From Octopus sinensis (lineage: Eukaryota), in assembly GCF_006345805.1 (NCBI RefSeq), contig NC_043013.1:44392001-44456000 (forward strand): a DNA stretch of 64,000 nucleotides, in the 5' to 3' direction. This document shows positions 592 to 64,000 of the stretch, in pieces. Under the pieces are notes generated by a model. That model worked only from the letters and a program-made list of their open reading frames with translations. It was not told where the DNA came from and ran no database searches. Numbering within the stretch: position 1 is the stretch's first letter; each line of letters begins with the position of its first letter. The translations under genes and the position numbers were made by a program.

Positions 592-726
592 CTAAGAGAC
601 ATCACGACTACCATATTTGCCCAGACATAAGAAACAACAACAGTGAAATAAAAACAAAACATTAAACTCATCTTGAACTATGTCAGATCCATTATGGACC
701 ATCCTTCATACAAAGTGAAAGTCCTA

Positions 727-1137
727 GGATCTTTCCGGTTTGAATGGCAGTTTTTAACATAATTTCTAAGTAACTAAAAAATATTAAACTTCGTATACTG
801 GTAGAATGTGTTTATAAAACATTTTTTTCTTTTGGCTTTATTGAGAAAATTCTATAGTTTGTAAGATATTTGTTGTTTTTTTCTTCAATTTCTGCAATTT
901 CAACCAATCACTGACGTCTATAGAGGTAAAAAAACATTCTGTGCTGTCTGAATATGTCCCTCATTTAAGAAACAGATTGGGTTTATTTACATTTGTGAAG
1001 GAAAAAGATACCCTTCTCCTCACCCCTAACCCTAAAACAGATTGAAATGCAATAGATCGATACTAGGGTCATAATTATGGGTGACAATTTCATATGACAC
1101 CGCTAGAAAAAACTGCCGTTCAAACAGGAAAAGATCC
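727..1137. mobile_element. ~410-bp MITE (inverted second copy at ~9165-9557)
   Basis: TIR GGATCTTT..GTTTGAA.GGCAGTTTTT; the two copies are reverse complements along their length. Confidence 0.8.
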
Positions 1138-1439
1138 AAGTCCTATTGTTGTCATTTCTACCCATTACACCACCAGTGACGGTGGGATAGGGTGACAAAC
1201 ACACATATGATGAGCTTCTTTCAGTTTCCGTCAACCAAATCCATTCACAAGGCTTTGGTCGGCCCAAGGCTGTAGTAGAAGACACTTGCCCAATGTGCCA
1301 TGCAGTGGGACTGAACCCAGAACCATGTAGTTGGCAAGCAAGCTTCTTACCACACAGCCACTCCTGTATATATATATGTATATGTATATATGTATATGTA
1401 TGTATGTATGACATATGAGTGACAACCTGGCCACTGGTA

Positions 1440-3021: not shown

Positions 3022-3232
3022 AAGATGCCATTTATTTTGGTCCTTCATCACCTTATCTGAAAGGTTCAGCATTATGAGGTTGCCCTTCAGTACATTGTCC
3101 CAGGTCTGCCTGAGTCTCTCTCTTCCACAAGTTCCATCCACTTTAGGTGAATGGCACTTCTTTATGGAGCTGTTGGCATCCATCCTCATCACATGATCAA
3201 ACCAGCGCAGTCTTCTCTCTTACGCACTGCAT
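3022..3232 (-). mobile_element. RTE LINE ORF C-terminal fragment
   Basis: VRKRRLRWFDHVMRMD..GTCGRERLRQTWDNVLKGNL..DQNKW, matching the RTE C-terminal consensus. Confidence 0.8.
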
Positions 3233-12671: not shown

Positions 12672-13524
12672 GGCAAGAAGCCTCCCTTACGAGGTAAAAG
12701 GGTTTATTTTGCTGTCAGTTGGTGTTTCGAGAAGTAAAAAGAAAAATATTTTTGTTTCACATGGGTGAGTTACTAATCTAATGAACAAACCCCAATCTGG
12801 GACTGTAGTATATTACTAGTTTTCATTTTAATCCTTTTGTTACCAACCCGGCCGAAACCGGCTCTGGCTCTGTTGTACAATGTCTTGTTTGCTTAAGGTT
12901 TCAATTAAAATCTTTCACCAAACCTTAGTCACAATTTATGTTCCTAATACAAGCTGAATGATAAGGAAGTTATTTTACTAAATTCTTTGTTATATTTAAA
13001 GTAATTGAAAGAAACAGAACATCTCAAAATAAGGGTTATGTAGTAGAATAGCTTGCCTGGTAGTTCATTCTGGGCTATGCTTTTATGAGAGCTACACTTT
13101 TGGGTTTACTGTATAGGCTAGGGTCCAGGGGTGGCAAATTCAAAAGCTGCCCCTGTTGGTACACACTCTTAGCTATGCCACTGGGGGACATGTATATGGC
13201 AAAGCCCTCAACCATTTCTGCTATCTCTTAAGAATTACAAAAATATTGGTTCGAAATTTTAGCACAAGGCCAGCAATTATGGGGGAGCGGGGAAAATCGA
13301 TTATAACAACCCCAGGGCTTGACTGGTACTTATTTTATCGACCCCAGAAGGATGGTAGGCAAAGTCAACCTCAGCAGAACTTGAACTCAGCACATAAAGA
13401 TGAACGAAATACTGCTAAGCATTTTGCTTGAAGAATTACAAAAAATATTAAAAACATGTAGAATATATCTGCTGAAGAATTAAGACTAACAAGAATCTAT
13501 GTAAACAGTAACCATGGTAGCAAA

Positions 13525-13860
13525 TGTATCATCATCATCATCGTTTAACGTCCGTTTTCCATGCTAGCATGGGTTGGACGGTTCAACCTGGGTCTAGGAA
13601 GCCAGGAGGCTGCACCAGGCTCCAGTCTGATCTGACAGTGTTTCTACAGCTGGATGCCCTTCCTAACGCCAACCACTCTGAGAGTGTAGTGGATGTTTTT
13701 TACGTGCCACTGGCACAAGTGCCAGGGGAGGCTGGCAACGGCCACGATCAGATGGTGCTTTTTATGTGCTACCGGCATGGAAGCCAGTCAAGGTGGCACT
13801 GGCATCGGCCATGTACAGATGATGCTTTTTACATGCCACCGGCACAGGTGCCAGGGAAGA
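13525..13860. mobile_element. Family-C interspersed repeat with (CAT)n end and internal GTGCCAC repeats. Other copies: 2230-2520, 15650-16085, 26570-26800, 33840-34445, 36245-36580, 48330-48890, 60840-61090, 61340-61630, 63770-64000
   Basis: Shared (CAT)nTTTAACGTCCGTTTTCCATGCTAGCATGGGTTGG..CAGCTGGATGCCCTTCCTAACGCCAACCAC. Confidence 0.88.
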
Positions 13861-14000
13861 CAAATTCATTTTTAATGTATTGTTTGTTGATAAATGTTGA
13901 AGTGTGTAGTCAAAGTATTCAATGTTGTTCCTTCCTCTTTCTCAAGGTTGTCAGTTAATGCTGCTTACTTTTTTTTTACTGCTTGTTGTATTCTTTTTCT

Positions 14001-14184: not shown

Positions 14185-16289
14185 ACACAAGAAGCCTCTT
14201 TTATGACCTTAAAAATTAATGTATCAGTAGCTATCTTATAATTGGAGGAAGCTTCAAACAAATAGATCTACGACTAGGTTTCTGTTTCTGATTGAAGCTC
14301 TTTCACTTCACTTGCTAGCACGTTAAGAAAACAAGTATTCTCATCTATAAATTTCAGACCTTATTTTCTTTTACTTGGACTGCAGTCATGCTAGGGCACC
14401 ATCTTTAATGACTTTTAGTCAATCATATTGACCTCAGGACATGTTTTGAAGTCTAGTACTTAAGATGTGGAGTCAACATCAAGACAGAGACAGAGACATA
14501 CAAGCACATACATATGGGATCCTACATTGTTCCCATCTACTGTTTTCACTCATAAAGCAATGGTCAACCAGTGATTATAATAGATGTCTAAAATTCCACG
14601 CAGTGGAGCAAACCTGAGACCATATGGTTGTGAAGCATACAGCAATGCCTGCACCCCTATCTACATATTAAAGCAAAAACCCCACAATTATTATCGCAAG
14701 AGTGGCTGTGTGGTAAGTAGCTTGCTTATCAACAACATGGTTCTGGGTTCAGTCCCACTGCATGGCACCTTGGGCAAGTGTCCTCTACTATAGCCTCGGG
14801 CCAACCAAAGCCTTGTGAGTGGATTTGGTAGACAGAAACTGAAAGAAGCCTGTCGTATATATGTATATGTATGTGTGTGTATTTGTTTGTGTGTCTGCAT
14901 TTGTTCCCCCAACATCGCTTGACAACCGATGCTGGTGTGTTTACATCCCCGTAACTTAGCGGTTCGGCCAGAGACTGATAGAATAAGTACTAGGCTTCCA
15001 AAGAATAAGTCCTGGGGTCGATTTCCTCGACTAAAGGCAGTGCCCCAGCCAGGCCGCAGTCAAATGACTGAAACAAGTAAAAGAGTAAAGAGAATAACAT
15101 GAATAATATTGTGTTTGATATTATCCATTGGGTATGATAGAAGACATTCTTTAGTCAACCCATGAAAGGAAGGTTGGCACCCCTTGAGGTAGCACCTTGA
15201 ATTAGTAGTAACAATCTCTATGGTCAATGTGAACTTCAAAGCTTAGTAGAGCTGGAAAAGTGTATTATTCCCTACAACTGCTATGGCAGATGATGTCTAA
15301 AACAATCTGATACTTTCAAATGCTTTTGTTACCTTTTTTTTTCCTCATTGCTATTCTTAGTTTCAAAAATCTTTTGAATTCTGATTCACACTTTGACAAC
15401 ATGAAACGGGTATCCAGCTTTTGCCAGTAGTAAAAAGTTTTCAGAAAATCAATATCAAAAAAAATATAGGAAACAAAATCTCCAAAAATTCACAGAGCTC
15501 AGCTACCATGTCAAATAAGGCTGGATACAGTAAATCAATTGTTTATGTAGTGAAATGACATGTTTTCATGAATGCACTGAAATTCTCATTTAAATATGAA
15601 TAAGTTATCTCTGACAGTTCTGGGTATATTGGTAACATTGAAATCAAATTCGATGACTGGCATCCATGCTAGTGGGGCACAAAGAGCACCATACGAGCCT
15701 GATCGTTGACAGAGCGGCTAACCGGCTTCCGTGCCAGTGGCACATAAAAGGCACCATTCAAGTGTGATCATTACCAGCATCGCCTTACTGTCACTTGTAA
15801 AAAACATTCGAGCAAGGTCGTTGCCAGTACTGCCTGACTGGTCCCCGTGCCAGTGGCATGTAAAAAGCACCATATAAGTGTGGCCGTTGCCAGTACTGCC
15901 TGACTGGCCCCCGTGCCGGTGGCACGTAAAAGCACTCACAACACTCTCGGAGTGGTTGGCGTTAGGAAGGGCATCCAGCTGTAGATTGGAGCTTGGTGCA
16001 GCCATCTGGTTCGCCAGCCCTCAGTCAAATCGTCCAAACCATGCTAGCATGGAAAGCGGACGTTAATCAAAGATGATGATGATGTCAGAAACATTCTTGA
16101 ACAATTGTGGGTGGGTTGGTAATGAAAGGGTTAAGAAGCGAGATATGAAGTTAAACTGCATCCAATTCCATTGTTGCAGAGTGGTCTTCTGGGTAAGTTT
16201 ATCTATATCAGGATAACACAAAATAGGAGTAGCAACAGCCTGTTGATGTTTATATTGGGGTCCCCTTGATGTCATGGGATTTTAGTGGG

Positions 16290-25461: not shown

Positions 25462-28400
25462 TTATCTATCCAACCACAGACGTGGCTGTGTGGTTAAAGA
25501 GCTTACTTCCCGTCCATGTGGTCTTGGGTTCAGTCCCAGGGCACGACACATTTCACAAATCTCTTCTACTATAATCTCGGGTCAGCCAGAGCTTCGTTAG
25601 TGGATTTGGTAGACGAAAACTGAAATAAGCCTATCACACACATACAAACTAATGTATGTGTGTCTTTGGTGTGTATTCTTATCTTAACATCACATGATGG
25701 TTGAAAGCAAACATTTTCTTCATTTCCAGTCTTCTGTGAAAAATGTTTGGCCATGAGAAATCTTACCTTACTTGAAGGGTTGCTAACAAGACGGACGCCC
25801 AACTGGTGAGAAATCTGTCTCAACAAATTCCGTCCGACCCATGCAAGCACTGAGAATAGCAAAGAATTCTCCCATTACCTCTGACCAATGACAGCTGATC
25901 CCCTCAAAATTGAAGGTTCATGCTTACTGGCCAATGTGGAGACACCCCTCAGCCAGAGCTTTCATAACATATACAACTAATTGTTGTAAGGATATAATAC
26001 ACAAGCATACGACTGTAGTCATGTGTGTATGAATTTAGGAAAAAAAAAAAAGAAAAAAGCTGTGTAGTAAGAAGTTTGCTTAGTCCCACTGCGTGGCACC
26101 TTGGGTAAATGTCTTCTATAGTCTTGGGCTGACCAAAGCCTTGTGAGTGAGTTTGGTAGACAAAATCTTAAAGAAGTCCATCATATATGTGGTGTGTGTG
26201 TGTGTGTATGTGTTAGCTTGCCACCCACCACCACTTGAAAACCATTATTGGTGTGTTTACATCCCCGTAATTTAGTGGTTTAGCAAAAGAGACCGATAGA
26301 ATAAGTACCAAGCTTTAAAACAAAACAGAACTGGGGTCAATTCGTTCAGCTAAAATTCTTCAGGGCGGTGTTCCAGCATGGCCAGTCTAATGGCATGAAA
26401 CATGTAAATGATAAAAGATAAATGAAAGAATAATAAATCTGTCACCATTAACCTCATCACTATAATTCCCCTTCTACCAGGTTGCTTTAACTCATTTGTG
26501 GGGCCAAACATGCAGGGAGTTACTCTATAAACATATCCCCAAATACTCCTTGATGTGCTTCTAGCTTCTACCATCATCATCATCATTTAACGTCCGTTTT
26601 CCTATGCTAGCATGGGTTGGACGGTTTTGACTGAGGGCTGGCGAACCAGATGGCTGCACCAGGCTCCAGTCTTGATCTGGCAGAGTTTCTACAGCTGGAT
26701 ACAATTCCTAACGCCAACTACTCCTAGAGTGTAGTGGGTGCTTTTTTACGTGCCACCTGCACGGGGGCCAGTCAGGCGGTACTGGCAATGACCTCGCTCA
26801 ATAAACATTACTTCAGAAGGATTAATAAGAACGCTAAAGGGTTAAGGGTGAGTAGTAATAACTTGGAATAAAATGAAAATAAAGATATTAGTGAGGAGGG
26901 TGGGGGCAAAACAAACTCTCAAAGTATAAGGTGAGCATAAGAGAAGATATGATGAGTGGATCGGGGGAGATGTTTCGATGTTCTTTCTCTGGTGTGAAGG
27001 ATTAATCAAACATGATTATTCAATTTCTTTAACCATCTGTAGCTATGTGTTGCAATCACACAGGTCCTAGCTTCCTTTGCTACTTGTTGTCACAAAACCT
27101 GCTAAAAATAGTAGCCAAATCTTCTTCAAATCACACCTTACCATTAAAAACTGGCAAGGATGCCTTAAATAACATAATCCCAGAGATCTCTGAAAAAAAC
27201 AGGATAGCCATGGATGGAATGCCTTTCATCAGATCAGCTCAATCAGGGTTGAATTGGGACTAAACAATAATAATTTTTACCTCTTTATTATGAGAATATA
27301 TTACTCTTTTACTTGTTTCAGTCACTTTACTACAGCCATGCTGGAGCACCGCCTTTAGTCGAGCAAATCGAACCCAAGACTTATTCTTTGTAAGCCCAGT
27401 ACTTATTCTATCCGTCTCCCCTCAACACATTAACTAATAAGGGAACCCTTGTAAGATACAAGGGGCTGCTGAAAAGTCCCTGACTTTAAGGGTATTGTAA
27501 AAGGCCTGGTTGGAGGCCTAACCTTCTGAATTCTTTTACAGGGCTTAGAAAACTGAAGGTCTGCTGCAACAAGTGTGTGAATCTGAGAGGGGAAAATGTT
27601 GAATAAAAACCTCTATTTTCTTTTATCTAAAGCTAGGAACTTTCCAGCAATACTTCGTACATTGTTAACCAACTATTCGCCTTTTAGTTTTCAAACCAGC
27701 CAAATCTGGTCCCTCACACCTACTCTACATTGCTATTTTAAAAATAAAATAAACAGCCATATCATAGAAATCAAAACAATGTGAATAAATAAATATTACA
27801 TTTGACAAAATAATCTGAATGCTAAAGGGTTAAAACAACACTTGATATTATTGTTGGTTGAGGGAGACAGTTAATATTTCTCACTCCTGTTACTTTCTTT
27901 ATATTCTGTCGTGAACCCCTCATTCCAAACTGTTTTCATCCTACAGTTACTGAAAGACTTCTATGTGAGATGAACAAATATTGGTTTCAAATTTTGGCAC
28001 AAGGCCAGTAACTTCAAGGGCAGGGTTAGTCAATTAAATCGACCCCAGTGCACAACTGGTACTTATTTTATCGACTCCGAAAGGACAAAAGCAAAAGTGA
28101 ACCTTCACTGGCATTCAAACTCAGACGAAATGCCGCTAAGCATTTTGCCCAGCATGGTAACAATTCTGCTGGCTTGCAGCCTTAGAGATTAACAAAAATT
28201 ATTGCTAGGATTGTAGCACACATAAATCCGAAGACCAAATCCAAAGATAACAACAACAACGATAATGTAATGTTAGCTGGAAAACTGAATCTGAATGAGA
28301 AATCATGTTAGGAAAAACATTTCAATAGAAAACAACTTGACCTTTTCTCGACAATCCAATGACAGTTTTTTTTATTTTATTCCATAAACAAATCAGTGCA

Positions 28401-30402: not shown

Positions 30403-31479
30403 TGTGTGTGTGTATGTGTGTGTGTATATGTTTGTGTGTGTGTATATGCTTGACAACCGATGCTGGTGTGTTTACATCCCCGTCACTTAGCGGTTCGGCA
30501 AAAGAGACCGATAAAATAAGTACTGGGCTTACAAAGAATAAGTCCCGGGGTCGATTTGCTCGACTAAAGGCGGTGCTCCAGCATGGCCGCAGTCAAATGA
30601 CTGAAACAAGTAAAAGAGTAAAGAGAGTATAAAGTGTGTGAGTGTGTGTGTGAGAGAGAGTGGGTATGTGGGTGTGTGTTCAATTAAACCCTGTAGAGAG
30701 CAATGTCACAATATCTATAGCTGAATATGACCTAAAGATCCTGAAGACAAGTCAAATATTTCAGTAGTTTAGTTATTGTACTTTTCAACCACAACAATGT
30801 ACAATATTGATAACAAGTACGACAACAGCAATAAAATTATTTCTTAATTAAGCACAAAATTTTAGGCAAGTAAAGTCAAGTGTCTTGCCCAACACTTGCA
30901 GTGGCTAAGGAATTCATGACTCTGAAGAAGCCAAAATTCTTCATTTTTACTTTTCTGGTGCAGAGAGAAATAATAAAAAGCTAGGTGGCCATGCAATGGA
31001 AGAGCAGCAGCAGTAGCAGCATTAGAGTTGAAGAACTGACAGAAATTGTAAAGTGGAGGTTTATAAAACCAAATTGATGAAATAGAGAAATGTTGGGGGA
31101 TCCAGGAAAATGAAAAAGTGAATGGAATATTAACAAGCAATTTTAATTTTTATTGGACGCATGAAATACATAAAGCAAAAATAAACCAAAAAGAAAGAAA
31201 AACAAACAAAAAAACATAAAATATGGCAAATAAATATAAAAGCGATAATCAAGCGTAAACAGAAAAGAAAAAAAAAAAAGAGCTGAAAACATTTCAAGAT
31301 GCAATTATGTTCAAGAAAGATAAAAATCTGATACATGTGACCTCCACCACAATAATAAGTTAAGATTAACAGTTTAGATATCTGAGATAATGAGTTGTTA
31401 TTACTAAGATGAGATTATTTTATTAGCCTCATTATTAAAATATATTTATTATCTACACTATGTTTTGATCTCTTATTAT

Positions 31480-33835: not shown

Positions 33836-34504
33836 GAGTCCACAACCGTGGCCTTCTACATGGGATGGAGCCAGCCTACGTATGCATACCTTCCCTTCTT
33901 GGACACAAAACTCTACTTGTGAAGACGTGTTGAGGCAAGTGAGGATCAGAATCGAAATCGATCAATGGAAATTGCGGATGTGCTACCAGTGCCGGTGGCA
34001 TGTCGAAACTCTGCTTGTGAAGACCCATTGAGGCAAGTGAGGATCAGAATCGAAATCGATCAATGGAAATCGATCAATGGAAATTGCAGATGTGTTACCA
34101 GTGCCGGTGGCATGTAAGAGAACTTTCCGTTTCGCGACCGTTGCCAGCACCGCCCCGTTTCGTGTCCGTTGCCAGCCTCGCCTGGCCCTCGTGCCGGTGG
34201 CACATAAAAAGCACCATCCGTTCGTGGCCGTTTGCCAGCTCTGTCTGGCACCAGTGCGGGTGGCACGTAAAAAGCACCCACTACACTCACGGAGTGGTTG
34301 GCGTTAGGAAGGGCATCCAGCCGTAGAAACACTGCCAGATTTGACTGGGCCTGATGAAGCCTTCTGGCTTCACAGACCCCAGTAGAACCGTCCAACCCAT
34401 GCTAGCATGGAAAACGGACGCTAAATGATGATGATGATGATGATGAATGTGTAAAAAAAACTATATGTGTGTGTATATACTTTATGTGGTCTTATTTAAA
34501 AGCA

Positions 34505-40601: not shown

Positions 40602-41340
40602 AGTTAGTTAGTTAGTTAGTTAATTTGGCTCAAAAGCAAATAGCAAGGCCATGTAGGGGGACATGGAGTTAAGTACAGGGTGGTGTTCATGTAAAGAGTT
40701 CAGGCCACTTGTGGTCCAGGGAGGCTTTGAACAAAGTGGTCGTCGGCATCTTCACCATCTCGTCTGGCAGCTTGTTCCACGGATCCGCAACCCGGATGGA
40801 GAAAGCTCCTCTCCTTCGATTGAGATGAAATCGTCGCAGGTAGAGCTTTTCGGAATGACCCCGCAGCCGACGCTCTGGAGCAGGAGTGAAGAACAGCTCT
40901 TTCGAGAGGTTACACTTTCCGCTTATGATGTTGTGGGCGAGAATGAGATCACCACGGCGGCGGCGTTTTTCTAGAGAATAAAGGTCGAGCGTCCTCAGCC
41001 TTTCTTCATAGGACAAATTTTTGAGACCATGAACCATGCGGGTAGCCAGCTTCTGGACTCTTTCGAGATGCTGTATGTCTTTGAGGAGATAAGGAGAAGA
41101 GGCTTGAATCCCATACTCCAATATGGGTCTCACCAGCGTGACATAGAGTGGTAGGAATATGGCTGCTGTGAGCATTCTGAATGACCGTCGAATCAAGAAC
41201 AGAATCCCGCGTGCTTTGTTGGCAGCATGGACGCACTGGGCCGAAGGCGAAAAGGAGGAATCCACCAAGATACCCAGGTCCTTTACCTGATCGGTCCTCT
41301 CCAGCAGCAGACGACCCGGCTCGAAATCAAGTTGAGTTGC
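40602..41340 (-). mobile_element. CR1-clade LINE, 5'-truncated, intact ORF2 C-terminus with (TAAC)n tail
   Basis: ORF 40687-41268: LYVTLVRPILEY..LERVQKLATRMV..YEERL..LEKRRRRGDLI..RGH..WNKLP..FKASLD, the typical CR1 ORF2 C-terminus. Confidence 0.92.
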
Positions 41341-41758: not shown

Positions 41759-42634
41759 CAAGATCTGATCAATAAGTATCCGGACTGTTGCCATAGCAAC
41801 AAAGCTGCTTGATAAAGACTGAGCTTGAATTCTGCTGTGCAGGCACTTTAAGTTTTAACGTTCTAGCTCACTTCCGCTGTTTACAGCAGTGCTTGGAAGG
41901 AAGATGTGTAGCATGTGATCATTGCATTGACCATGACAGAGAAAGTTGTCATGGCGATACCTACTCAGAGGCCTGCACAAAGTTGCAGAAAGTGCATGGA
42001 GAGGTCTGTATGAGCCACACACAAGTGTACGAGTGGTTCAGATGTTTCCAAGATGGGTGGAAACATGTCGATATTGATGAATGTTCTGGGACATCTGCAA
42101 CCAGCAGAACTGAGAAAAATATCATAGATGTGCATGCAGCTGTGAGGGAAAATCATTGAATCACCATCCGTGAATTATCAGAGTATGTGCAAAGTAGTTA
42201 TGGCTCAGTTCAGTCCATTATCACTGAAGATTTGGGTATGAGACGCTTGTCTGCCAAGTTTGTGCCAAATCTGCTTTCAGCTGACCCAAAAGACACTTGG
42301 GTTTCAGTTGCACAAGATCTCCTTGATTGTATCAAGAACGATGAAAACATTTTGAAAACTTTTGCATAGGCCTCTAAGTAGGTATCACCAAGGTTTTGGC
42401 AAAATTTGATGCAGACTCTTTGCTCAACTCTCTCTGTCATGGTCAATGCAACGATCACACGCTACACACCTTCCTTCTAAGCACTGCTGTAAACAGTAGA
42501 AGTGAGCTAGAATGTTAAAACTTAGTGCACATGTACAGCAGAGTTGAAGGTGAATCTGTACCAAGTGGTTTTGCGCTGTGTGCTTTAGCTTCGTTACTAT
42601 GGCAACAGTCTGGATACTTATTGATCAGACCACG
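41759..42634. mobile_element. Non-autonomous mariner derivative with an inverted duplicate 5' end
   Basis: TIR TCTGATCAATAAGTATCC(G/A)GACTGTTGCCATAG at both ends, flanked by TA. Plus-strand transposase N-terminus (..QVYEWFRCFQDG..ITIREL..LGMRRLSAKFVP) and a minus-strand copy of MTERVEQRVCIKFC. Confidence 0.9.
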
Positions 42635-43917
42635 TATACAATATAAACTAGATATATGTGTGCGATATTATACACATGAAGAAAAACCAACCCATTACAC
42701 TGTGCTCCCAATGGCAAAACTTGGGCTAAGAAGGAAGTCTCTATGTGGTCACATGACCTGCTAGGAATAATAGTCAAATCTCCCTCAAATCAAAATCACA
42801 CCATTCTAAGCAATGAAGAACACACTGATCAGCATGATTTTAGATAATCCTAAAAAGATGGAATGACTAGCAGGAATGCTTTTGATGATAGGTGTGGTTT
42901 ATTGAAGTCAACCAAGGGTTAAACAACAATGGTACAATGAAGTTGGGTATTAATTCATCAATTAGAATTACACAGTAAAACTATTTCAGATTTAGCTGTA
43001 GTTATTATATGACATACATAATGTAGTTTATATATGCCAGTGCCATGTAAAAAGTACCTAGAACACTCTGTAAAGTGGTTGGCATTAGGAAGGGCACCAA
43101 GCCATAGAAACCCTGCCAAAACAGACAACCAAAGCCTGGTGCAGCTCTCCAGCTCCCATCAAAATCATCCAACTCATGCCAGCATGGAAAACAGATGTTA
43201 AATGATGATGATGATAGCATATACATATACATACATACACATACATACATACACATACATACATATATCTTTTTACTCATTTACTTGTTTCAGTCATGTG
43301 ACTGTGGCCATGCTGGAGTACCGCATTTAGTTGAGCAAATCGACCCCAGGACTTATTCTTTGTAAGCCTGGTACTTATTCTATCGATCTCTTTTGCCGAA
43401 CCGCTAAGGTACGGGGACGCAAACACACCAGCATTAGTTGTCAAGCGATGGTGGGGGGGCAACCACAGACACACAAATATACATATATATGACGGGCTTC
43501 TTTCAGTTTCTATCTACCAAATCCACTCACAAGGCTTCGATCAGCCTGAGTCTATATCAGAAGACACTTGTCTATGGTGCCACGCAGTGGCTCTGAACCC
43601 AGGACCATGTGGTTGGTAAGCAAGCTATTTACTACACAGCCACTCCTGCATCAACTGTCATATATTTAATCTGAGCAAGCTTGAACTGACGATGATTGTT
43701 ATGTTTATATTACACTTAAAATTTTCATGTCAGACTTAGCAACGCTAATTTACTTCTTTCACACATGCTAATCTGCTAGGCATTTATATTCAACTCAAGC
43801 ACACAAGTAGAGCATATCAAAACTATTTCATAGTTTAACTCCTAGCTTTTTGCTTTTAAATTTTCCTCTGTCACCCTTTGTCATATATTACAATATCTTA
43901 CTACAGTATTTCTCGAC

Positions 43918-44246
43918 TGAATTTGTCCTTTACTTGGATGAATTTGTCTCTCTCTCAAATGAATTTGTCCCTTTCTCAAATGAATTCGTCCTTTACTTGG
44001 ATGAATTTGTTCTTTTCTCAAATGAATTTGTCCCTTTCTCAAATGAATTCGTCCTTTACTTGGATGAATTTGTTCTTTTCTCAAATGAATTTGTCTCTTT
44101 CTCAAATGAATGTCTCTCTCTCAAATGAATTTGTCCCTTTCTCAAATGAATTCATCCTTTACTTGGATGAATTTGTCCTTTTCTCGAATGAATTTGTCTC
44201 CTTCTCGAATGAATTTGTCCCCTTCTTAAATGAATTCATCCCTTTG
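43918..44246. repeat. 21-bp tandem array (TGAATTTGTCCCTTTCTCAAA) x ~16 inside the transposon left end
   Basis: Units counted directly: 15 complete (one is 19 bp) and one partial, with 63-bp higher-order periodicity (a ...TTTACTTGGA variant recurs). Confidence 0.95.
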
Positions 44247-44468
44247 ATATCAAAGTCAATTTAGAACTTAAATATTTAAAAATGAGACACCTATATGTTT
44301 AAACAAACATACAAAATAGTATCTTAGCACGAGAATAGTGAAAATAAACAAAAAAAAAACTAAGCTTAAAACAATTTATAAACTTATTTTAAAATGCTTA
44401 TAATCATAACTATTTCACAAATCCTTCATATGCAATAGTTGTGGGATGAAAAATGTTTGATGTTGATC

Positions 44469-45585
44469 CTATCTTGCACAATTTACAGCAGATATTGAAT
44501 TCATTGCAAGATGCACTGCTGTTTTTAAAATATTCATTCTATGATTCATCACGGGCAAATTTTCTGGTCTGTTGTAGAGATCATTTTTATGATTCTGTAA
44601 ATGCTGCTTCACAAAAGATTTCAATTCGTTGAACGTTTCCTCAATGAGATTAAACATTGGAGAATAAGGAGGTAGATATTTAACCATCTTTTGTGGTGCG
44701 AAACCGATTTCATCGACATGTTTATGGATGCGTGCATTGTCCATAATAAATATGACAGGATCTGATGTAGTCGTAGTGATCTTTAGCGAACTCTGATGTA
44801 AAAAGCTGTCAAATTCAGAAGTTGTGATCTTCGTAAATGTTTTGAATTGGACAAGACCCGACATATCTCTAGCAGCAATAATGTTCAAAATTTGCCCCTT
44901 TAGTAGAAGGATGATCGGTAATTGCCTGAACTCGAGGGTAAGCTCTACCCATTGACCTTCAAACAAATAGGTCATAAAATTATTTCATAAGCAAAAATTT
45001 TATATAAGTATTTAGTAAATTTAATAATCATTTACCTTGAAATTCAAATGTAATTTGTTTCATCAATATATACACGATAGTTGAACCGTCCAACCCATGC
45101 TAGCATGGAAAACGGACACTAAATGAATGATGATGATGATGATGAATGGCCAATCCATTATCTTGAATCCATTTTGCATAATAACATTGCCCCTTATTTT
45201 GTGTTTTCGTTATTTTGTTCTTGAGGGTGAATTATTAGTTTTTTCAGAGTGTATCCAAAGCCATCAAGATAGAGATCAATACTTGATAATGAAACAGTCA
45301 AATCGAATTTCTTTTGTAAAAGTTCTCTCGTTCTTTTCAAAGTTAAAGTTGGATCCTCGTTAATCGATTCTTGTAAAAATTGTTGATGATTTTAATTGAT
45401 TTTTTGCTGTCGGTGCCCACAATTTTTCTTTAGAGAATAATTTTTTTGTGCAATTATCTTGACTGTGCTGTGGTTAATATCAAGGAAGCGGGACAACAAT
45501 TTCAAATTTTTAATGTTTCTGGAAGCGGACAATATTCTTTTTTTTTATCCTGCTCAGATACTTTCATGTACGTCTTGTTTGGCAT
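44469..45585 (-). pseudogene. DDE_3 (IS630/Tc1-like) transposase, two exons, disrupted
   Basis: ATG at 45585. Motifs: HTH-like EDPTLTLKRTRELLQKKFDLTVSLSSI; D1 in VYIDET; D2 in IMDNARIH; E in YLPPYSPMFNLIE. Disrupted by in-frame stops, frameshifts and a SINE remnant at ~45080-45140. Intron at 44957-45035. Confidence 0.88.
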
Positions 45586-46624
45586 GTTAAAAATGTTTAA
45601 ACTATTATGTTTTTAAACGGACTTTAATACTGAAAGGATGAATTCATTTGGGAAATACTGTAGTTTTTCATAATGTTACTTACTCAAGGAGTGTCATGTG
45701 CATACTGCTGGTATAAATGTATAATTAGAGTGTAATAACTAAGAAATGACGGAGAATTGTTATTTGTGAAACTCTATCAAGGATAAATGTGATAAATCAT
45801 TTCGCAATTGTTACAAGAAATTACTATATTTACAGATTTCTCAGTGCTGGAGCTGACTTTATAAAGAATGCTTTATTGTACTCAGTAGTTCAATAGCTCA
45901 ATGTTGTGAGTTCAACACTCACCTTTCCTAAAGACTTTCATACCAGTAACACACTGGTATTAATTCACCTCCAAACACATTCCCTAAAAATTGCTGCACC
46001 AGTAAAATAAAGGCAAATAAATAAATGGACTTCTGTTCATTTCAACATGATCAACTGAACAACCTGCTTGTTAAATTTGCATGTAAGTGACTGAATATTC
46101 CATGGATGTTTGTGCTCTTAGTGTAATCTTCAATCAGAGTCAGCATGGCACAGCAAGTGACAAGGACAGACCTTTGAATTACAGTTGCAACACATATGAA
46201 GGGCTTCCACTCACTTTCAGTCCACTCACAAAGTTTGAGTTCGCTCAAGGCTACTGTAAGAGAAACTTGCCTAAGGTGTCATACAGTCAGGGATTGAACC
46301 CAGGGCTTCATGACTGGAATGCTAACTTCTTAATAACTAATCATCCATGCAGCATCCACTCTACATTAATCTGATTTTAATCTACATCGAAACACTTATC
46401 CATCCAGGTTTTAAAGGTAGAGAATAAAGGTAAATGCCAAGACAACAGTAAGTTTATATTTGTATTTTAATTTTAATTTAGAGGTTTACTGTTCAAGGTT
46501 CAAATCTTGCTTAGGTTGATTTAGTTATTGATGTCATCAAGGTCAATAAAAATAAGTTTTAGTATTATATACTGAGACCAATTCAATTAATAGTATCCTT
46601 TTCACCTAAATATATATATATTGT

Positions 46625-47765: not shown

Positions 47766-50566
47766 TGTGTGTGTTGTGTGTGTGTGTGCATGTCCGTATG
47801 TTGAAAGAAAGAAAATGGAGAAAAATGGATATATGAAAAATTTATTTGTATGATATAAAGATGACGAAATTTTTTAAAAACATAACAATACAAATAAATT
47901 ATAAGTTATTGAATAAGCTCAAAAAATGTGAAAAAACTTACATATAAGTTTTTGTTCTAGACCCTAGTTGATATGCAATTCTAAGTATTTGGTTATATGC
48001 TAAGAAAGGTATCATTTTTCAACTATATGGGACAGAACTTCTTCAGGGTTATTATGAGCTTACAGAACTAAGGTTAACATTTTTCTTTGAAGGATGCACT
48101 CTTTGCCTTGACATAATGAGATAACTGTAAATGAGCATTGTCAGTCAAATGGTGTTGTTTCCAATATTCTATGAAAACATATCCAGCTATGGGGAAAAAA
48201 ATTACCTTGCTAGGAAACACATGAAGAAAGGTGACATCTGGTCATGGAAAAATTTGCCTCACTGATTTTTCACTTGATTTTATGCAAGCAAGGCAATGTG
48301 TGTATGATGATGATATACATAAACACGTGGGGTGTAACTGGCCCACTTATGAGTAACCCTCATTCACTGGACAATGAACTTTGCTTGCAAAGACCTATTG
48401 AGGCAAGTGTAAACAAATAAAAATTGCCGACGTGGCCGATGATAGTACAGTGGAACGTTAAAAGCACATCTGAGCATGATTGTTGCCAGGGCCACAGATT
48501 GGCTCCTGTGCTGGTGACACGTGAAAAGCACCATTCGATCGTGATTGTTGCCAGTGTCGCTTTACCAGCACATGTGCTGGTGGCACATGAAAAACAACAT
48601 TTGAGCATGGTTGTTGCCAGTGCCACCGGACTGGCTCCCATGCAGGTAGTATTTTAAAATACCTCTTGAGCGTGGTTGTTGCCAGAACCGCCTGATTGGC
48701 CCTCGTGCTGGTGTCACTTAAAAGCACCCACTACACTCTCGGAGTGGTTGGCATTAGGAAGGGCATCTAAGCTGTAGAAACTTTGCCAGATCAGACTGAA
48801 CCTAGTGCAGCCTCTGGCTCACCAGTCCTCAGTCAAACCATCCAACCCATGCCAGCATGGAAAGCAGAAGTAAAACAATGATGATGATGACTGCATTAAA
48901 TTAAATTAAACATGAATCCAAGATGAAAAAAAAAAAAACTGTACACAGAACCACACTCAGGAGTCAAGCCATGCATCTGTCATAATCCAGATGACCATGT
49001 AGGGTTCAAGGTTCAAAGCCAGCAATTTTTGAGAAGAGGGGGACAAGTCATTTACACTGACCCCAATTTTTACCTCTGGACCCCATTGGTTACTATTTTA
49101 TTCTGGTGAACCCCTAAGCCATTCAATGCTTAAAAACTACTTATAAAGATACTTCTTTCAAAATTCCTGTTTTGCTTTTCATGCATTCACTTGTGTAGCT
49201 TTGCAAAAGCTCTCACTGAGAGAATATTTCAGTGGTCAGAAACATGATGCATGTGGAGGATGACATCTGCATAAAGTGTAGGACATGTGAAGTGGACGGA
49301 ACCATGGAAGAGGGAGACTTGGGAAAATAAGGCACAAAGTGAAGATTGATTTAAAATGTTGATCCTCATGGTGGAGATGATATCACAATAATTGATAACA
49401 TGCAGCAGTGTAGAGGACCTGTCCAGTTTTGCAACTATGGTGAAATTAATGTTAAAATGGAGGTAGTGATAGAGGCTGAGAGATATAATATAACTGTATT
49501 TGGTCCCCTCTCCCAATAGGTTCCTGCTGAGCCTACACCTGCCACCTTCCTCACTTCCTGATACCCTTTCGCTTCTCTATTATCTTCGCTTCTATTAACT
49601 GTACCATGGCTGCTCATGTAGGAATATCATTGGACCAGCCTGACAACTCTCATCTCTCTGATACTCACTATCCTTTCACTGGGCCATGTCACTCATGCAA
49701 CAAGTTATGGCACTAGATTTACCTGTATGCACCATCCACCATCATCCTGTATTCAATACTGACCAACACTCTTTCTATACTAACAATCAATGTTCTCTCT
49801 TTCCTTCTCCCCTACCCCTCCACATCATCCCTATTGCCAATTGATCTGTCCCTAACATCATACATTTCTTCCCTTCATTCATATTAGTTTTTCCCATCCT
49901 AACAATCTGCTGTTCACCCTCTTGGTCATGTTGTATTAAAAAATCAAACAAGACATAAAACAGCGAGGACTTTTTTAGTCTTACAGGGCAAAAGTCAAAC
50001 ACACTAGTGTTAGTGGGTGGCCATGATAAAACGAACCCAGTACACTGTGTAAAGTGGCTGACGACAATAAGAAGGATATCTTGCCATAAAGACAAAACCA
50101 AAAATGTACAAGGAAGACAGAGCTCTCCAACTCATTTAGGGGGGCAATAACTCTGAATCAGATCTCACTTGAACCTCGACAACACATCCAAACTATGCCA
50201 GCATGGAAAGTGGACATAAAAATGATACATATAAACAGATATATACATTTTTTTCTTTGTGTCTTAGGATTTGTGAAGCCAGTTGCCCAGTTTTTATGGC
50301 ATGTAAATGATTGAAACCACAACACTGTCCCAGAACAGGATGTCTGTCTGTTATAAGGTTCAAGATTCAAAGCCAGCAATTTTTGAGAAGAGGGGACAAG
50401 CCATTTACACTGACCCCAGTACTTGACTGGTGCTTTATTTTATCAACCCCCAAAGGGATGAACAGCCAATAAAGTTGACCATGGGGAGATTTAAACTCAA
50501 TATGTAAAGATCTAGAAAAAAACCCAAAAAACTGCTAAGAATTTTGATTAATGTGCTCATGATTCA

Positions 50567-59092: not shown

Positions 59093-62000
59093 ATTTCAAA
59101 CATCAATAACAATTCAAATTAAACCTTGCTATCTTCCAATCATCATAGTCTCTTGACTAGAAAAAGCATAAATGTGATTCACCCCTTCCCTCCTCAGATT
59201 AACAACACTCAAACATGCATACATACACACATACACACACACAAACCTAGTTATTACGTTGTAATCAAATATGCTAAAGCTGAACTGCAGAAGGATTAAA
59301 GGATTAGTCAGTTATTACAGAAGACTTAATACCAACTGTATTGACTACTGACAAATGTTTACTATCTTTCTAGAGATAATCTAGAAACATCAATAAGACT
59401 TCCTTGTGGCTTCTACACGTGTCTTTATATGATATAAAATGGCAAGCCGTAATCACCATCTAGATTGCCCATTTGTGCTGACGAGGAAGCCTCTGTGTGG
59501 TTCCTCAAATTGCTTCATTGTTTTATGATTTTCTCTTTAATAGTTTAGTTAGAAGAGAAAGAGTAGTACTCGTGATATTTTTGCAGGACCACCAAGGCTA
59601 GAGAGATGGCGGAAGTTACCTCTAAACTCCAGAGGTAAAAATGGATTTTTGTGGGGACAACACCCCTACCTAGAAAAAAAGAAGTTACAGAAGCATTGAG
59701 AACAATTCAAAACTAACAGGACCTGGGAAAGGGGCAGAAAAGAGAACCCAGAGAACAATACAGTTAGGTCATGAAAGGTCTATGCTCTATAGGGGAAAAA
59801 AAGGGTCAAGTATCTTCAAACTGGAAAGTTGGTCTTAATGCTTGCAACAAAGTGAACTCAAAAGTATTCAAAGGCCAGATGATGGTATCAAATTAGGAAA
59901 GGGGAGCAGCTCCTCCAATGAACTTCCACATAGTTTCTGGCTATCAAGTTCTAATAAGGTTTTGGTCAATTGATGCCTAATGTAGAAGGCACTGGCCTAA
60001 AGTGCCAAACAGTATGATTGAACCAGGAACCCTGGAATGTAAAGCAAACCTCTTAACCACAGGATTGTATATCCAATGCCTCCATCAGTGAAGGTTGATC
60101 ATGTCTCTGCACCTGTATGCGCAGACCTGGGAAAGGTTTTCTGTAGAAAATTAGCAGTTGCCCTTGCATGCTAGTCTCTCCCTTTTATGTTATAGATGTT
60201 GTCTGAGGGAAAGGCAAGGCCAGTGCAGTTTGGTACCAGTGTCATGGTAGGTATTGCTGTCACAATGAAAAAAAGAGCCAGAAATAGGCATGACAAAACA
60301 TCCTGTCCGATGCCCTCACACTTTTGTCAATCCACTGCCCTGGATTGGTCAGTAAAAAACAAAGTAGCAATTCAGGGTGAAGAATGAGCACTTCTTTTAT
60401 TGATCATGAAAGAATGAAAGACAAAGTTGACCTGGGCAGGAATTGAACAAAAAGCACAGAGACTCAGAGAAAATACTACGAGACATTCAATACTCTAATG
60501 ATTGCTAATTTTCTGCTTTCTGTGTATGTGTGTATGTGAAGGCGCATGGCTTAGTGGTTAGAGTGTTGCACTCACAATTGCAATGTTGTGGGTTTGATTC
60601 TATACTATATATATATAGTATAGAGTAGGCATATATCGGCCTTGAGAGATCATGGATCTGTGCCTGAAGAAACTGCTGACAGTGGTGCAGCATCTGCTGT
60701 GGCTGTAGAGGCCCACATCAGAGTGGTAGTCATGCATACAGCAACAGCATTTAAAGGAGCTTCTGATTTTTCCTTCCGTCAAGCATGCTTTTCTTTGGTG
60801 GCAAGGCCATGTTTTTCTTCCCTTTGCTCATATATATTTATCATCATCATCATTTAACATCTGTTTTTCATACTGGCATGGGTTGGATGGTTTGACAGGA
60901 GCTGACAAGCCAGAAGATTGCATCAGACTTCATTGTCTGTTTTGACATGGTTTTTACAGCTGGATACCCTTCCTAATGGCAACCACTTCACAGAGTGTAC
61001 TGGGTGCTTTTTTTTTATGTAGCACCAACACCAGTGCTTTATATGTGGCATCAGCATGGGTGCTTTTTACATGGCATCAGCATGGGGTCTGCCTGTCTGT
61101 CTGTCATAACGTATATGTAGAAGCAGGAAAGAAGAGGACGAATCAAAGGGATAACCCCTGTCAGAATGTATATTTATGAAAATGGAAGGTGAGGAGAGAA
61201 AGTTGTTTTTGAGAGAGAAATATGGTGAGAGTGTGCATGAAAGATAAATAGATAGGTAGTGTTGACACCATAGTAACTAACATGGAGAATTCATGAGATC
61301 ACCTCCTCCAATGCTCTCTCCCCTCTCAAAATTCCTTGTCTTGCAAGTTATTTGGTGATCCTGCCAGTGCCACGTAAAAAGCATCCAGTCCACACAGTAA
61401 AGTGCTTGGCATTTGGAAGGGCACCCAGCTGTAAAACCATGCCAAAACTGACCTTGCCTGTGCTGGTCTCAAGTAAAAAGCACTCAGTTGACTCTACAGA
61501 GTGGTTGGTGTTAGAAAGGTAAAAAAACCAGCTGTAAAAACCCTGCCAAAATGGACACAGTAGCCCGAGGCAGTCTCCTACCTGGTCGACTCCTGTCAAG
61601 CCATCCAACCCATTAAATGATTATGATGAAGGTCGATAATTGGTTGGAAGTAATTTAAAATTTTTAATTGGCGTGGTGGATTGTGGGTAGTGGTGGTAGT
61701 AGCTGAGAGCACATTAACTGCTGCCACCTCATTTAACATAGTTACCTGCTGAAAATAGAAGCCGAATATCATTAAAACTACATTCTACCATGTTAAAAAA
61801 ATGAACTCATTGGATAAAGTGGTTCTGATTCTCCCTGTGTGAAAAAGAAAAACAAAATGGTCACAGCTTGAATGCTGTCTGTATGAACAGGGGATGGTCT
61901 GAGGCTAAACGACAAAAAAACTTAGAAAAGCCTCATTAGTTCAGGTAAACATCTATATGTATTACTTTCAAAAATTATACTCAATCACCCTGTAAGTGGT

Positions 62001-62472: not shown

Positions 62473-64000
62473 CTTTCTTGTTTGGATTAACTTTATATAT
62501 ATATATGTATACTTGAGTGTTTAGCTGTGGATATCTATCTATATGTAACATATGCACATTGACATACTTATGGTCGTTCATTGATGTGTAACACTGAAAT
62601 CCAACCTTCACACAACAAATATACACACACACACACACACGCACAAAGCTGATATGAAAATGTATGAGTAAAAACCTTTTGTACATTAATCATCCACCAA
62701 CGTAGAAACGTATGAGTATTAAACCGATGTAACAGCTGCAAAATCAGTCACATCTGTTACTCAGTTGTAATATTTTGTCGTTAATGACTAGAATCATTAG
62801 GTGGCGAGTTTGAAGCAATGCTTGAATGCCAGGTTAAATTCTGTAGTGTATTTTATGTCATTCTAAAGAGATTTTCAGTTCAAATACTTTGCCAAGGTTG
62901 ACTTAGGCACTTGTACCGTCTGAGATTGATGAAATAACTGCCAGTCATATACAAAGATCAATTCATATGAAAATTTTTACCTTACACTAACAGTGCTACG
63001 TAAAAAGCGCTGGTGCTGGTACCACATAAAAGCACTGGTGATAATGCCAAACTAAAAGCATTGGTGCCATGTAAAACGCACTAGTGATGGTACCACATAA
63101 AAGCACTGGCGATAGTTTTCAACTAGCAACAATCACGCCTCGGATTTACCTCATTGGCCATGGTACCGCCTCTGTCAAATAAAACGCACCAGTGTCATAT
63201 AAAACACACCGGAGCTAATAGTTGATATAAACAACTATTATAACTACCCATTAAAATTGTTGTGGCCTTGTGCCTGTGTTAGACAACATTAGTGATTGGC
63301 TATGTGGTAAAAAAGTTGGCTTCTAAACTATATGGTTTTGTGTTTGTTCATGTTGCATAGCACCATGGGCAAGTGTCTTCTTCACTAGTGCCAGACTTAT
63401 TAATGATTTGTGAGTTAAGTTGGTAGACGGAAAGTGAAAACTGGTTTTTGGGTTCATTCCATTGCATGCATATGTGCAGGTGAGTGATCATAAATGAGTG
63501 AGTGTGTGTGTGTTTCTTCACACCTGTGTCCTGATATTGTTGATACACTTAACACATGAATCAATAACACTGGTCAGATGGTACCATTGTTTATACCTGC
63601 TTTAAAAACATGCCAGGTCATTTTATGGCTTGTCATATAAAAAACCAAGGGAGTAAATATCTTATTTGGAATCAAACTGGTAAAGCATCTAGAACAGAGA
63701 AATCTGCCTCAATAAATCTCATCTAACCCATGATGCATGGGAAAAACAGGTATAAAGATAAGATAATGACCATTGTCATTGTTTAATATCTGCTTTCCAT
63801 GCAGGCATGGGTTGGACGGTTTGACAGGAGCTGGTCAGCTGCAGAGCTGTCCAGACTTCAATTACCTGTTGTAACATGGTTTCTATAGTTAGATGCCCTT
63901 CCTAATGCCAACCACTTTACAGAGTGTGCTGGGGGCCTTTTATGTGCCACTGGCATGGGTGTGTTTATGTAGCACTGAAAAAGTGAATTTTATATAGTAC

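What the first reader, a model, noticed from the sequence alone, without database searches (positions are those of the whole stretch)
44957..45035. Spliceosomal intron inside a Tc1/IS630-like transposase gene
Seen on the minus strand: TCAAG|GTAAATGA...79 nt, AT-rich...TTTGTTTGAAG|GTCAATG. Removing it joins VYIDETNYI*IS-R-SMGRAYPRVQAITDHPSTKG in frame, which fits the post-D1 pattern (W..R..GRA..G.RA....P..RG.N). Retaining it shifts the frame. Introns are known in a few Tc1/mariner elements, but an intron just after the first catalytic Asp may define an undescribed family. It could also allow splicing-regulated transposition.
Basis: partly seen in the sequence, partly recalled or inferred. Interest (0 to 1): 0.7.

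Follow-up and report, generated by a model that had tools for sequence, protein, structure and literature searches.

The report
Intron-shaped insert in dead octopus transposon
A long-dead copy of a Tc1/IS630-type jumping gene in an octopus genome carries a 79-base piece that looks exactly like a short intron. It also has the duplicated flanks of a later insertion, and no relative has it, so it is an ordinary decayed transposon with one ambiguous feature.

Summary
Window 44957-45035 (minus strand) is a 79-nt, 16.5% GC, GT...AG segment. Removing it restores the frame and gives gap-free colinearity with intact relatives (ISR|SMGR vs CSRSFGR).

The gene is an IS630/Tc1-like transposase (DD32E). 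It sits in a 1757-bp element with TIRs and a TA duplication, in an Octopus genome.

This copy is dead. It has three nonsense codons, three small frameshifts, and a 65-nt SINE fragment 35 nt upstream of the segment.

The segment is flanked in register by a 14-nt direct repeat (12/14, p about 0.01-0.02) that spans AG|GT. A target-duplicating insertion would therefore produce GT...AG ends by itself.

None of more than 150 closest relatives is interrupted at this site. These include single-exon genomic copies in ticks and the nearest relative (45% identity).

In favour of an intron: the segment is far more AT-rich than host DNA. A sister subclade also carries a genuine, position-conserved GT-AG intron, but at a different site.

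No copy from the same lineage could be reached, so the family-consensus test could not be run. My estimate is about 0.5 private insertion and about 0.4 real intron of the parental element.

The claims of an undescribed family and of splicing-regulated transposition are not supported. Interest is low to moderate.

The parts
43904..45660 (-). Complete Tc1/IS630-like DNA transposon copy (1757 bp), flanked by the TA target duplication (45661-45662 and 43902-43903)
   Evidence: Sequence read. The ends are TA|CAGTATTTCCCAAATGAATTCATCC... and ...GGACAAATTCAGTCGAGAAATACTG|TA, imperfect terminal inverted repeats of about 27-30 nt. There is only one copy in the window.
44415..45585 (-). Transposase pseudogene, from ATG 45583-45585 to the ancestral stop 44415-44417. 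Catalytic residues: D1 45062-45064, D2 44739-44741, E 44640-44642 (32 residues between D2 and E)
   Evidence: Three-frame translation, tblastn with P0001 and P0165, alignment A1, Pfam DDE_3 and HTH_33. Lesions: a frameshift in the A-run at about 45538-45546; TAA at 45392-45394; a frameshift at about 45190-45200; a SINE insert; a one-codon deletion plus TGA at 45044-45046; the 79-nt segment; a frameshift in the G-run at 44895-44898; TAG at 44469-44471.
44957..45035 (-). The 79-nt GT...AG, AT-rich segment (the finding)
   Evidence: Its GC content is 16.5%, and only 0.8% of 79-nt windows of the host sequence are this AT-rich. No similar sequence occurs elsewhere in the window (p=0.54).
45029..45042 (-). 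Upstream copy of the flanking direct repeat, TTTCAAG|GTAAATG, spanning the 5' junction
   Evidence: 12/14 identical to the downstream copy at a spacing of exactly 79 nt. In-register matches over 18 nt are 14/18, a level reached by only 1 of 162 AGGT...AGGT pairs in the window. The anchored alignment gives p=0.007-0.02.
44950..44963 (-). Downstream copy of the flanking direct repeat, TTTGAAG|GTCAATG, spanning the 3' junction
   Evidence: Same evidence as the upstream copy. The four genuine introns in relatives show only 5-8/18 junction matches.
45080..45144 (+). 65-nt 3'-terminal fragment of an abundant octopus SINE (with an (ATG)n tail), inserted antisense into the ORF 15 nt upstream of the D1 codon and 35 nt (one 44-nt exon stretch) upstream of the 79-nt segment. 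No target duplication is visible
   Evidence: The window holds at least 10 other copies of the same SINE end. Colinearity with relatives (DNGL-AI|YR-VYIDE against DNGM-QTQR-IYIDE) shows a blunt insertion.
43909..44245 (-). 3' subterminal tandem array inside the element: 16 copies of a 21-bp unit (TTTCTCAAATGAATTTGTCCC on the + strand) that resembles the inner part of the TIR
   Evidence: Tandem Repeats Finder. The same 13-mer, TTTCTCAAATGAA, ends the contig of the closest relative, L001.

Best explanation
The 79 nt is a secondary gain in an ancestrally uninterrupted IS630/Tc1-like transposase gene, and it sits in a long-dead transposon copy in an Octopus genome. It most likely arose when about 65 nt of AT-rich DNA was inserted at the sequence TTTCAAGGTCAATG (codons Ile-Ser-Arg-Ser-Met) and about 14 nt of that target was duplicated. 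The duplicated target contains AG|GT, so the insert plus one repeat copy automatically begins with GT, ends with AG, and can be removed without disturbing a single codon. On this reading it is one more private lesion of this pseudogene, like the SINE fragment 35 nt upstream, and not a functional or family-wide intron.

Shown here: the segment and its exact removability; the dead state of the gene; the flanking repeat; the absence of any interruption at this site in all relatives found.

Inferred: that the event happened in this copy after it died, and not in the active parental element.
For: (1) The copy is a pseudogene with three nonsense codons, three small frameshifts and a 65-nt SINE insertion, so lesions of this kind have struck this ORF.
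(2) An in-register direct repeat flanks the segment, 12/14 (14/18). It was found independently by the repeat finder at spacing 79. It is reached by only 1 of 162 AGGT-AGGT pairs, and the anchored alignment gives p=0.007-0.02. The four genuine introns in related elements show only 5-8/18.
(3) The repeat spans AG|GT, which accounts for the GT...AG ends.
(4) None of the 150 best representatives, the sequences inspected, or the alignment A1 is split or gapped at this site.
(5) Genomic copies on Dermacentor silvarum chromosomes are single-exon: 1110 nt for 369 aa.
(6) The nearest relatives, P0001/L001 and P0165/L006, read straight through the site.
(7) The acceptor is AAG, the least favoured of the YAG/AAG acceptor forms (established knowledge).
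(8) The segment lies only 35 nt from the other large insertion in a 1.76-kb element, which fits a locally messy repair history.
Against: (1) The segment is 16.5% GC, the lowest 0.8% of host 79-mers. That is nearer the element's own UTRs (23-25%) and typical of the introns seen in relatives. A random piece of host DNA would rarely be this AT-rich.
(2) No source or second copy of the insert exists in the 64-kb window.
(3) The donor AAG|GTAAAT is a good 5' splice site. Both differences between the two repeat copies lie in the intronic halves, and one of them (C to A at +3) improves the donor.
(4) A sister subclade of the same family carries a genuine conserved intron, so introns are tolerated in this clade.
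(5) It is not known whether the intronless contigs of the nearest relatives (L001, L006) are genomic DNA or spliced RNA.
Confidence: 0.5

Rival explanations
1. The segment is a genuine short U2-type spliceosomal intron that the once-active parental element carried. It was gained in this lineage at an AG|G proto-splice site just after the first catalytic Asp. The flanking repeat is then either the scar of that gain or a coincidence. The window copy is a fossil of that intron-bearing element.
For: The GT...AG ends are exact. Removal restores gap-free colinearity with relatives. The donor AAG|GTAAAT is good, and a T-rich tract precedes the AG. The length suits a short intron. GC is 16.5% against 32-36% in the exons, the same direction and size of drop as in the verified introns of relatives. 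Six related lineages, 57-67% identical to one another, keep a phase-0 GT-AG intron of 38-84 nt at one position, after FSKFK[QKH]. This shows that the clade can carry and maintain introns. Both repeat differences lie in the intronic halves, and one improves the donor. Intron-bearing Tc1-like elements are documented in bivalves and in Sclerotinia (10.1101/656579; PMC4188875).
Against: No relative has an intron at this site. The window element lacks the intron that the sister subclade does have. The junction repeat is not a feature of the real family introns. The acceptor AAG is weak. There is only one dead copy and no transcript evidence.
Confidence: 0.4
2. The segment is a decayed local tandem duplication of the preceding exon (the AGGT-duplication route), or an assembly artefact.
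For: The last roughly 20 nt of the segment weakly resemble the exon just upstream (ATTTGAATTTCAAGG against ATTTG--TTTGAAGG). In the downstream frame this stretch reads YDLFV*RS, against the family's YNIWVSRS.
Against: Outside the 14-nt junction repeat, the interior shows no significant similarity to the upstream or downstream 120 nt (p=0.76 and 0.66). Nothing suggests misassembly: there are no Ns, and the sequence is continuous.
Confidence: 0.07

Closest known systems
Eukaryotic IS630-like / Tc1-like (ITm superfamily, Pfam DDE_3) transposons. Examples are the uncharacterised 'Tc1-like transposase DDE domain' genes abundant in hard-tick genomes (Dermacentor, Rhipicephalus, Hyalomma, Ixodes), plus many unnamed metagenomic and Logan contigs
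   Same: They share the HTH + DDE_3 architecture, the motifs YIDETN(Y/F)NIW.SR.FGR, DNAP.H and LPPYSP.FNPIEE, a size of about 340-370 aa, TIRs and a TA duplication. The closest relative, P0001, passes the NCBIfam IS630 cut-off.
   Different: The window copy is only 45% identical to the nearest member and is dead. It has 32 residues between D2 and E, where the tick copies have 33. It carries the 79-nt segment, which no other member has.
Intron-bearing subclade of the same family (P0168-P0171, P0175, P0176; loci L002, L007, L008, L009)
   Same: These belong to the same transposase family and have a short (38-84 nt), AT-enriched GT-AG intron inside the transposase ORF.
   Different: Their intron lies after FSKFK[QKH], downstream of the catalytic Glu, in phase 0. 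It is conserved across lineages that are 57-67% identical, and its junctions do not repeat each other (5-8/18). The window element has no intron at that site. Its own segment lies after D1, in phase 2, is unique, and has repeated junctions.
TLEWI (Tc1-like elements with introns) of pteriomorph bivalves (Puzakov et al., bioRxiv 10.1101/656579)
   Same: These are mollusc Tc1-like transposase genes interrupted by spliceosomal introns.
   Different: TLEWI have a DD36E signature, a YQDNDSKH motif, 3-6 exons and no TIRs or target duplication. They look domesticated and were reported absent from cephalopods. The window element is DD32E, has TIRs and a TA duplication, has at most one interruption, and is a pseudogene.
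New introns flanked by short direct repeats (intron gain through break repair or insertion, as described for Daphnia and for 'introner' elements; from my own knowledge, not checked here)
   Same: These are extra segments whose ends lie in a short duplicated target containing AG|GT, so that the splice sites are supplied by the duplication.
   Different: Those cases are in expressed host genes and have population or transcript evidence. Here the host 'gene' is a dead transposon copy, and no splicing evidence exists.

Membership tests
IS630/Tc1/mariner (ITm) DNA transposon | DDE catalytic triad in a DDE_3-type transposase domain | tested here: met
   D at 45062-64, D at 44739-41 and E at 44640-42 align with the invariant D/D/E of relatives. 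Pfam DDE_3 matches at E=1.2e-14, 54.8 bits against a cut-off of 28.6.
IS630/Tc1/mariner (ITm) DNA transposon | N-terminal helix-turn-helix DNA-binding region | tested here: met
   Pfam HTH_33 scores 27.9 bits against a cut-off of 25. The region aligns to the HTH regions of relatives.
IS630/Tc1/mariner (ITm) DNA transposon | Terminal inverted repeats and a TA target-site duplication | tested here: met
   The ends read TA|CAGTATTTC...GAAATACTG|TA at 45662/45660 and 43904/43902.
IS630 family (NCBIfam NF033545) | Score above the curated cut-off | tested here: inconclusive
   The closest intact relative, P0001, scores 123.2 against a cut-off of 100. The tick protein P0152 scores 99.4, just below it. 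The broken window protein itself was not scored against this model.
U2-type spliceosomal intron | GT...AG boundaries whose removal restores the reading frame and colinearity with uninterrupted homologues | tested here: met
U2-type spliceosomal intron | Splice-signal context (donor consensus, pyrimidine tract, YAG acceptor) | tested here: inconclusive
   The donor AAG|GTAAAT is good. The tract CCTATTTGTTTG is T-rich, but the acceptor is AAG, which is weak. Such motifs are common in DNA of 16% GC (consensus from established knowledge).
U2-type spliceosomal intron | Same position and conserved splice sites in other copies or relatives | tested here: not met
   No relative is interrupted at this site. 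Copies of the same lineage could not be obtained, so the test is incomplete for the lineage that matters.
U2-type spliceosomal intron | Spliced transcripts | not testable with these tools
   No octopus RNA-seq or transcript collection can be searched by DNA here.
TLEWI (intron-bearing Tc1-like elements of bivalves) | DD36E signature, no TIRs or target duplication, 3-6 exons | tested here: not met
   The element has 32 residues between D2 and E, has TIRs and a TA duplication, and has at most two exons. The definition comes from 10.1101/656579.
Insertion with target-site duplication | Direct repeat of the target flanking the insert, in register | tested here: met
   The repeat is 12/14 at spacing 79, with p=0.007-0.02.
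Insertion with target-site duplication | Insert recognisable as a copy of a repeat or a nearby template | tested here: not met
   The best match elsewhere in the window is no better than for shuffled queries (p=0.54). The segment has no terminal inverted repeats.
Insertion with target-site duplication | Empty site in paralogous or orthologous copies | not testable with these tools
   No searchable octopus genome is available. Only loci next to an identical annotated protein can be fetched.

The most novel reading that the evidence does not exclude
An octopus lineage of IS630/Tc1-like transposons gained a working intron immediately after the first catalytic Asp. The gain came from an insertion that duplicated an AG|GT-containing target, and this fossil copy still shows the birth scar. 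That would be a second, independent intron acquisition in a transposase clade in which another sublineage already keeps a conserved intron. It would make the clade a natural system for studying how cut-and-paste transposons acquire and tolerate introns.
Probability: 0.35. Interest if true: 0.5.

Novelty: new member of a known kind. Interest (0 to 1): 0.25.

Why it matters
If the segment is private to this copy, it is only one more lesion in a decayed transposon and has no wider meaning. It does illustrate a trap: an insertion that duplicates a target containing AGGT mimics an intron perfectly.

If it was present in the active element, it would be a rare case of intron gain in a DNA transposon with the gain mechanism still visible. 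It would also add cephalopods to the short list of hosts with intron-bearing Tc1-like elements.

The more solid by-product is the conserved intron seen in six related lineages. It shows that this IS630-like clade can maintain introns over long divergence.

Tried and rejected
(1) Other copies in the window: none. tblastn and blastn found only the element itself.

(2) Same-lineage copies in public collections:
- A protein search gave only P0001 (45%) and a microsporidian protein at 29%.
- The window ORF is not on record.
- The exhaustive representative search found nothing closer than P0001.
- Metagenome, GTDB-genome and viral scans gave only relatives of at most 34% identity, haloarchaeal IS630 elements, or nothing.

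(3) Reaching the Octopus vulgaris assembly through a neighbouring repeat protein (P0257): the locus fetched is another LINE copy and is not syntenic, so it holds no orthologous element.

(4) Extended tandem duplication as the origin of the segment: rejected. Outside the junction repeat there is no significant similarity to the flanking exons.

(5) Templated insertion from elsewhere in the window: rejected. The best hit (30831-30872) is no better than hits to shuffled queries.

(6) A miniature inverted-repeat element inserted at TA: no terminal inverted repeats.

(7) Deciding whether the intronless contigs L001 and L006 come from DNA or RNA: the accession numbers appear in no paper, and the contig ends are uninformative.

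(8) Naming the clade by its DDE spacing (DD32E/DD33E): the literature search gave nothing useful.

(9) Determining typical SINE target-duplication lengths in this genome: abandoned, because the SINE 5' ends are too variable to place.

Full report
**What is at the coordinates**

On the minus strand the sequence reads ...GAT GAA ACA AAT TAC ATT TGA ATT TCA AG|GTAAATGATT...CCTATTTGTTTGAAG|G TCA ATG GGT AGA GCT.... The segment 44957-45035 is exactly 79 nt. It starts with GT, ends with AG, and is 16.5% GC. If it is retained, it places a TAA in frame at once and shifts the frame. If it is removed, the product reads VYIDETNYI*ISRSMGRAYPRVQAITDHPSTKG.

**The element around it**

The segment lies in a complete Tc1/IS630-like DNA transposon at 43904-45660 on the minus strand, 1757 bp long.
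- The ends are TA|CAGTATTTC... and ...GAAATACTG|TA, that is, imperfect terminal inverted repeats flanked by the TA duplication typical of the superfamily.
- Inside the 3' end is an array of 16 copies of a 21-bp unit that resembles the inner part of the inverted repeat.
- The conceptual protein matches Pfam DDE_3 (E=1.2e-14) and HTH_33.
- The catalytic residues are D at 45062-45064, D at 44739-44741 and E at 44640-44642, with 32 residues between the second D and the E.
- It is the only copy in the window.

**The host**

The host is an octopus. A LINE fragment 3 kb away is 93% identical in protein and 97% identical in DNA to a copy on an Octopus vulgaris chromosome. The window is full of one SINE family with an (ATG)n tail.

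**The gene is dead**

Comparison with the two nearest intact relatives and alignment A1 show these lesions:
- a frameshift in an A-run near codon 15;
- a TAA at 45392-45394;
- a frameshift near 45190-45200;
- a 65-nt 3' fragment of the SINE inserted bluntly at 45080-45144, 15 nt before the first catalytic Asp;
- a one-codon deletion and a TGA at the invariant Trp (45044-45046);
- the 79-nt segment itself;
- a frameshift in the G-run at 44895-44898;
- a premature TAG at 44469-44471, with the ancestral stop at 44415-44417.

Whatever the 79 nt is, this copy cannot make a transposase. The idea of splicing-regulated transposition has no support here.

**Relatives**

A word-indexed search found only two proteins. 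The nearer is P0001: 340 aa, 45% identical, on the 1671-bp Logan contig L001. An exhaustive HMMER search with P0001 found 5212 relatives, 116 of them at E<=1e-30. Nearly all of the best 150 match as one uninterrupted stretch across the whole protein, and none is closer to the window than P0001.

A profile search shows that the clade is abundant in hard ticks. On Dermacentor silvarum chromosomes the gene spans 1110 nt for 369 aa, so it is a single exon in genomic DNA. P0001 passes the NCBIfam IS630 cut-off, and the best solved-structure match is a weak one to Sleeping Beauty.

In every sequence inspected, the site of the 79 nt reads straight through (YIDETN[YF]NIWCSRSFGRS). After the 79 nt is removed, the window aligns there without a gap. 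The segment is therefore an exact extra piece in an ancestrally uninterrupted gene, and the clade is not an undescribed family defined by this feature.

**No same-lineage copy could be reached**

- The window's own ORF is not on record.
- Scans of metagenomes, GTDB genomes and viral contigs returned only distant relatives or nothing.
- The one octopus locus I could fetch is not syntenic.

**Evidence that it is an insertion**

The two junctions repeat each other in register: TTTCAAG|GTAAATG at the 5' end and TTTGAAG|GTCAATG at the 3' end. That is 12 of 14 positions, or 14 of 18 when extended.
- The repeat finder reports the pair independently, at a spacing of exactly 79.
- Among 162 AGGT...AGGT pairs 40-150 nt apart in the window, only this one reaches 14/18.
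- An alignment anchored at the junction scores 11. Random pairs of AGGT-centred sites average 2.9 to 3.8 depending on the null set. This gives p=0.007, or p=0.02 when only AT-rich sites are used as the null.
- The four genuine introns found in relatives show only 5-8 of 18, so this is not a general property of introns.

A repeat of this kind is what a target-site duplication looks like. Because it spans AG|GT, the insert plus one repeat copy necessarily begins with GT, ends with AG, and can be excised without disturbing a codon. The second large insertion in this ORF, the SINE fragment, lies only 35 nt away. The acceptor is AAG, which is weak.

**Evidence that it is an intron**

- Only 0.8% of 79-nt windows of the host sequence are as AT-rich as the segment. 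The element's own untranslated regions are 23-25% GC and its exons 32-36%, so a random piece of host DNA is an unlikely source.
- No source or second copy exists in the window. The interior is not a decayed duplicate of the neighbouring exon, and there are no terminal inverted repeats.
- The donor AAG|GTAAAT is good.
- Both differences between the two repeat copies lie in the intronic halves, and one of them turns GTC into GTA, which improves the donor.
- The clade demonstrably tolerates introns. Six lineages (P0168-P0171, P0175, P0176), 57-67% identical to one another, break off right after FSKFK[QKH]. In the four contigs I read, a GT-AG intron of 40, 47, 84 and 38 nt follows, after which the reading frame resumes with [VI]IK.WF... 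and runs to the normal C-terminus. These introns are 7-23 GC points below their exons.
- That intron lies downstream of the catalytic Glu. The window element has no intron there, and those lineages have none after the first Asp.

**Weighing**

Both readings share a core that I regard as likely: the segment was gained by an insertion that duplicated an AG|GT-containing target. They differ only in when that happened. One places it in this copy after it died. The other places it in the active parental element, where it would have had to be spliced.
- The dead state of the copy, the neighbouring insertion, the still-visible repeat and the absence of the feature from every relative favour the first.
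- The composition, the donor quality, the placement of the repeat differences and the family precedent favour the second.

My rough likelihood estimates swing either way depending on priors I cannot fix. I put the private insertion at about 0.5, a real intron of the parental element at about 0.4, and other origins at under 0.1.

**Comparison with what is known**

Introns in Tc1-like elements are rare but documented. TLEWI in pteriomorph bivalves are DD36E, lack inverted repeats, have 3-6 exons and were reported absent from cephalopods (10.1101/656579). A second case is in Sclerotinia sclerotiorum (PMC4188875, listed). The window element fails the defining features of TLEWI. New introns flanked by short direct repeats are known from host genes (my own knowledge, not checked here). 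The present case would resemble them only if the segment proves to be shared among copies.

**Verdict**

This is a confirmed sequence observation inside an ordinary, decayed octopus transposon. The intron interpretation is plausible but unproven. The claims of a new family and of regulated transposition are not supported. Interest is low to moderate. One BLAST of the element against octopus genomes would settle it.

Noticed in passing
L002 2034-2073; L007 1959-2005; L008 about 1237-1320; L009 about 1407-1444: Six related transposase lineages (P0168-P0171, P0175, P0176; 57-67% identical to one another) break off after FSKFK[QKH], downstream of the catalytic Glu. In the four contigs read, a phase-0 GT-AG intron of 38-84 nt sits there, with intact exons on both sides. 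This appears to be a conserved intron in an IS630-like transposon clade. The host organisms are unknown (ENA ERZ17098432, SRA SRR11430612).
   Followed up: partly
window 43909-44245: Inside the 3' end of the element lies an array of sixteen tandem 21-bp units (higher-order period 63) that resemble the inner part of the terminal inverted repeat. The 5' end has no such array. The same 13-mer, TTTCTCAAATGAA, ends the contig of the closest relative (L001 1655-1667), although the proteins are only 45% identical. The array may be an amplified transposase-binding site.
   Followed up: partly
window 45080-45144: A 65-nt 3' fragment of the abundant SINE, with its (ATG)n tail, is inserted antisense into the transposase ORF. 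It has no visible target duplication and causes no loss of codons. That is unusual for a retroposon insertion.
   Followed up: partly
window 63057-63183 (-): A full-length match to U4 spliceosomal snRNA (Rfam RF00015, 54.2 bits against a gathering score of 46). I did not determine whether it is a gene or a pseudogene.
   Followed up: no
window 40607-41268 (-) and 41809-42159 (+): The first is a 193-aa ORF from the C-terminal part of a LINE-type protein, 97% identical in DNA to a copy on O. vulgaris chromosome OX597823.1. The second, next to it, is a mariner remnant with a Mos1-type HTH_48 domain. The window looks like repeat-rich non-coding octopus DNA, and I saw no host exon.
   Followed up: partly
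L003-L005 (Dermacentor silvarum CM023479.1 and CM023480.1), 180-1289 (-) and 2001-3110 (+): In the tick genome, identical 369-aa transposase genes occur as head-to-head inverted pairs about 700 bp apart, at several loci. In L006 the first 26 nt are the reverse complement of the bases at about 1331-1356, just before its last six bases. This hints at a similar inverted arrangement or at an assembly artefact.
   Followed up: no
window 13524-13958, 34060-34449, 16028-16084, 26572-26626, 48836-48890, 60840-60892 and others: At least ten copies of one SINE family are present, with internal repeated modules (GTGCCGGTGGCACGTAAAAAGCACC...) and an (ATG)n tail. Their translations give the recurring 'HHHH..SVFHA.MGW' pseudo-ORFs seen throughout the window.
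   Followed up: partly
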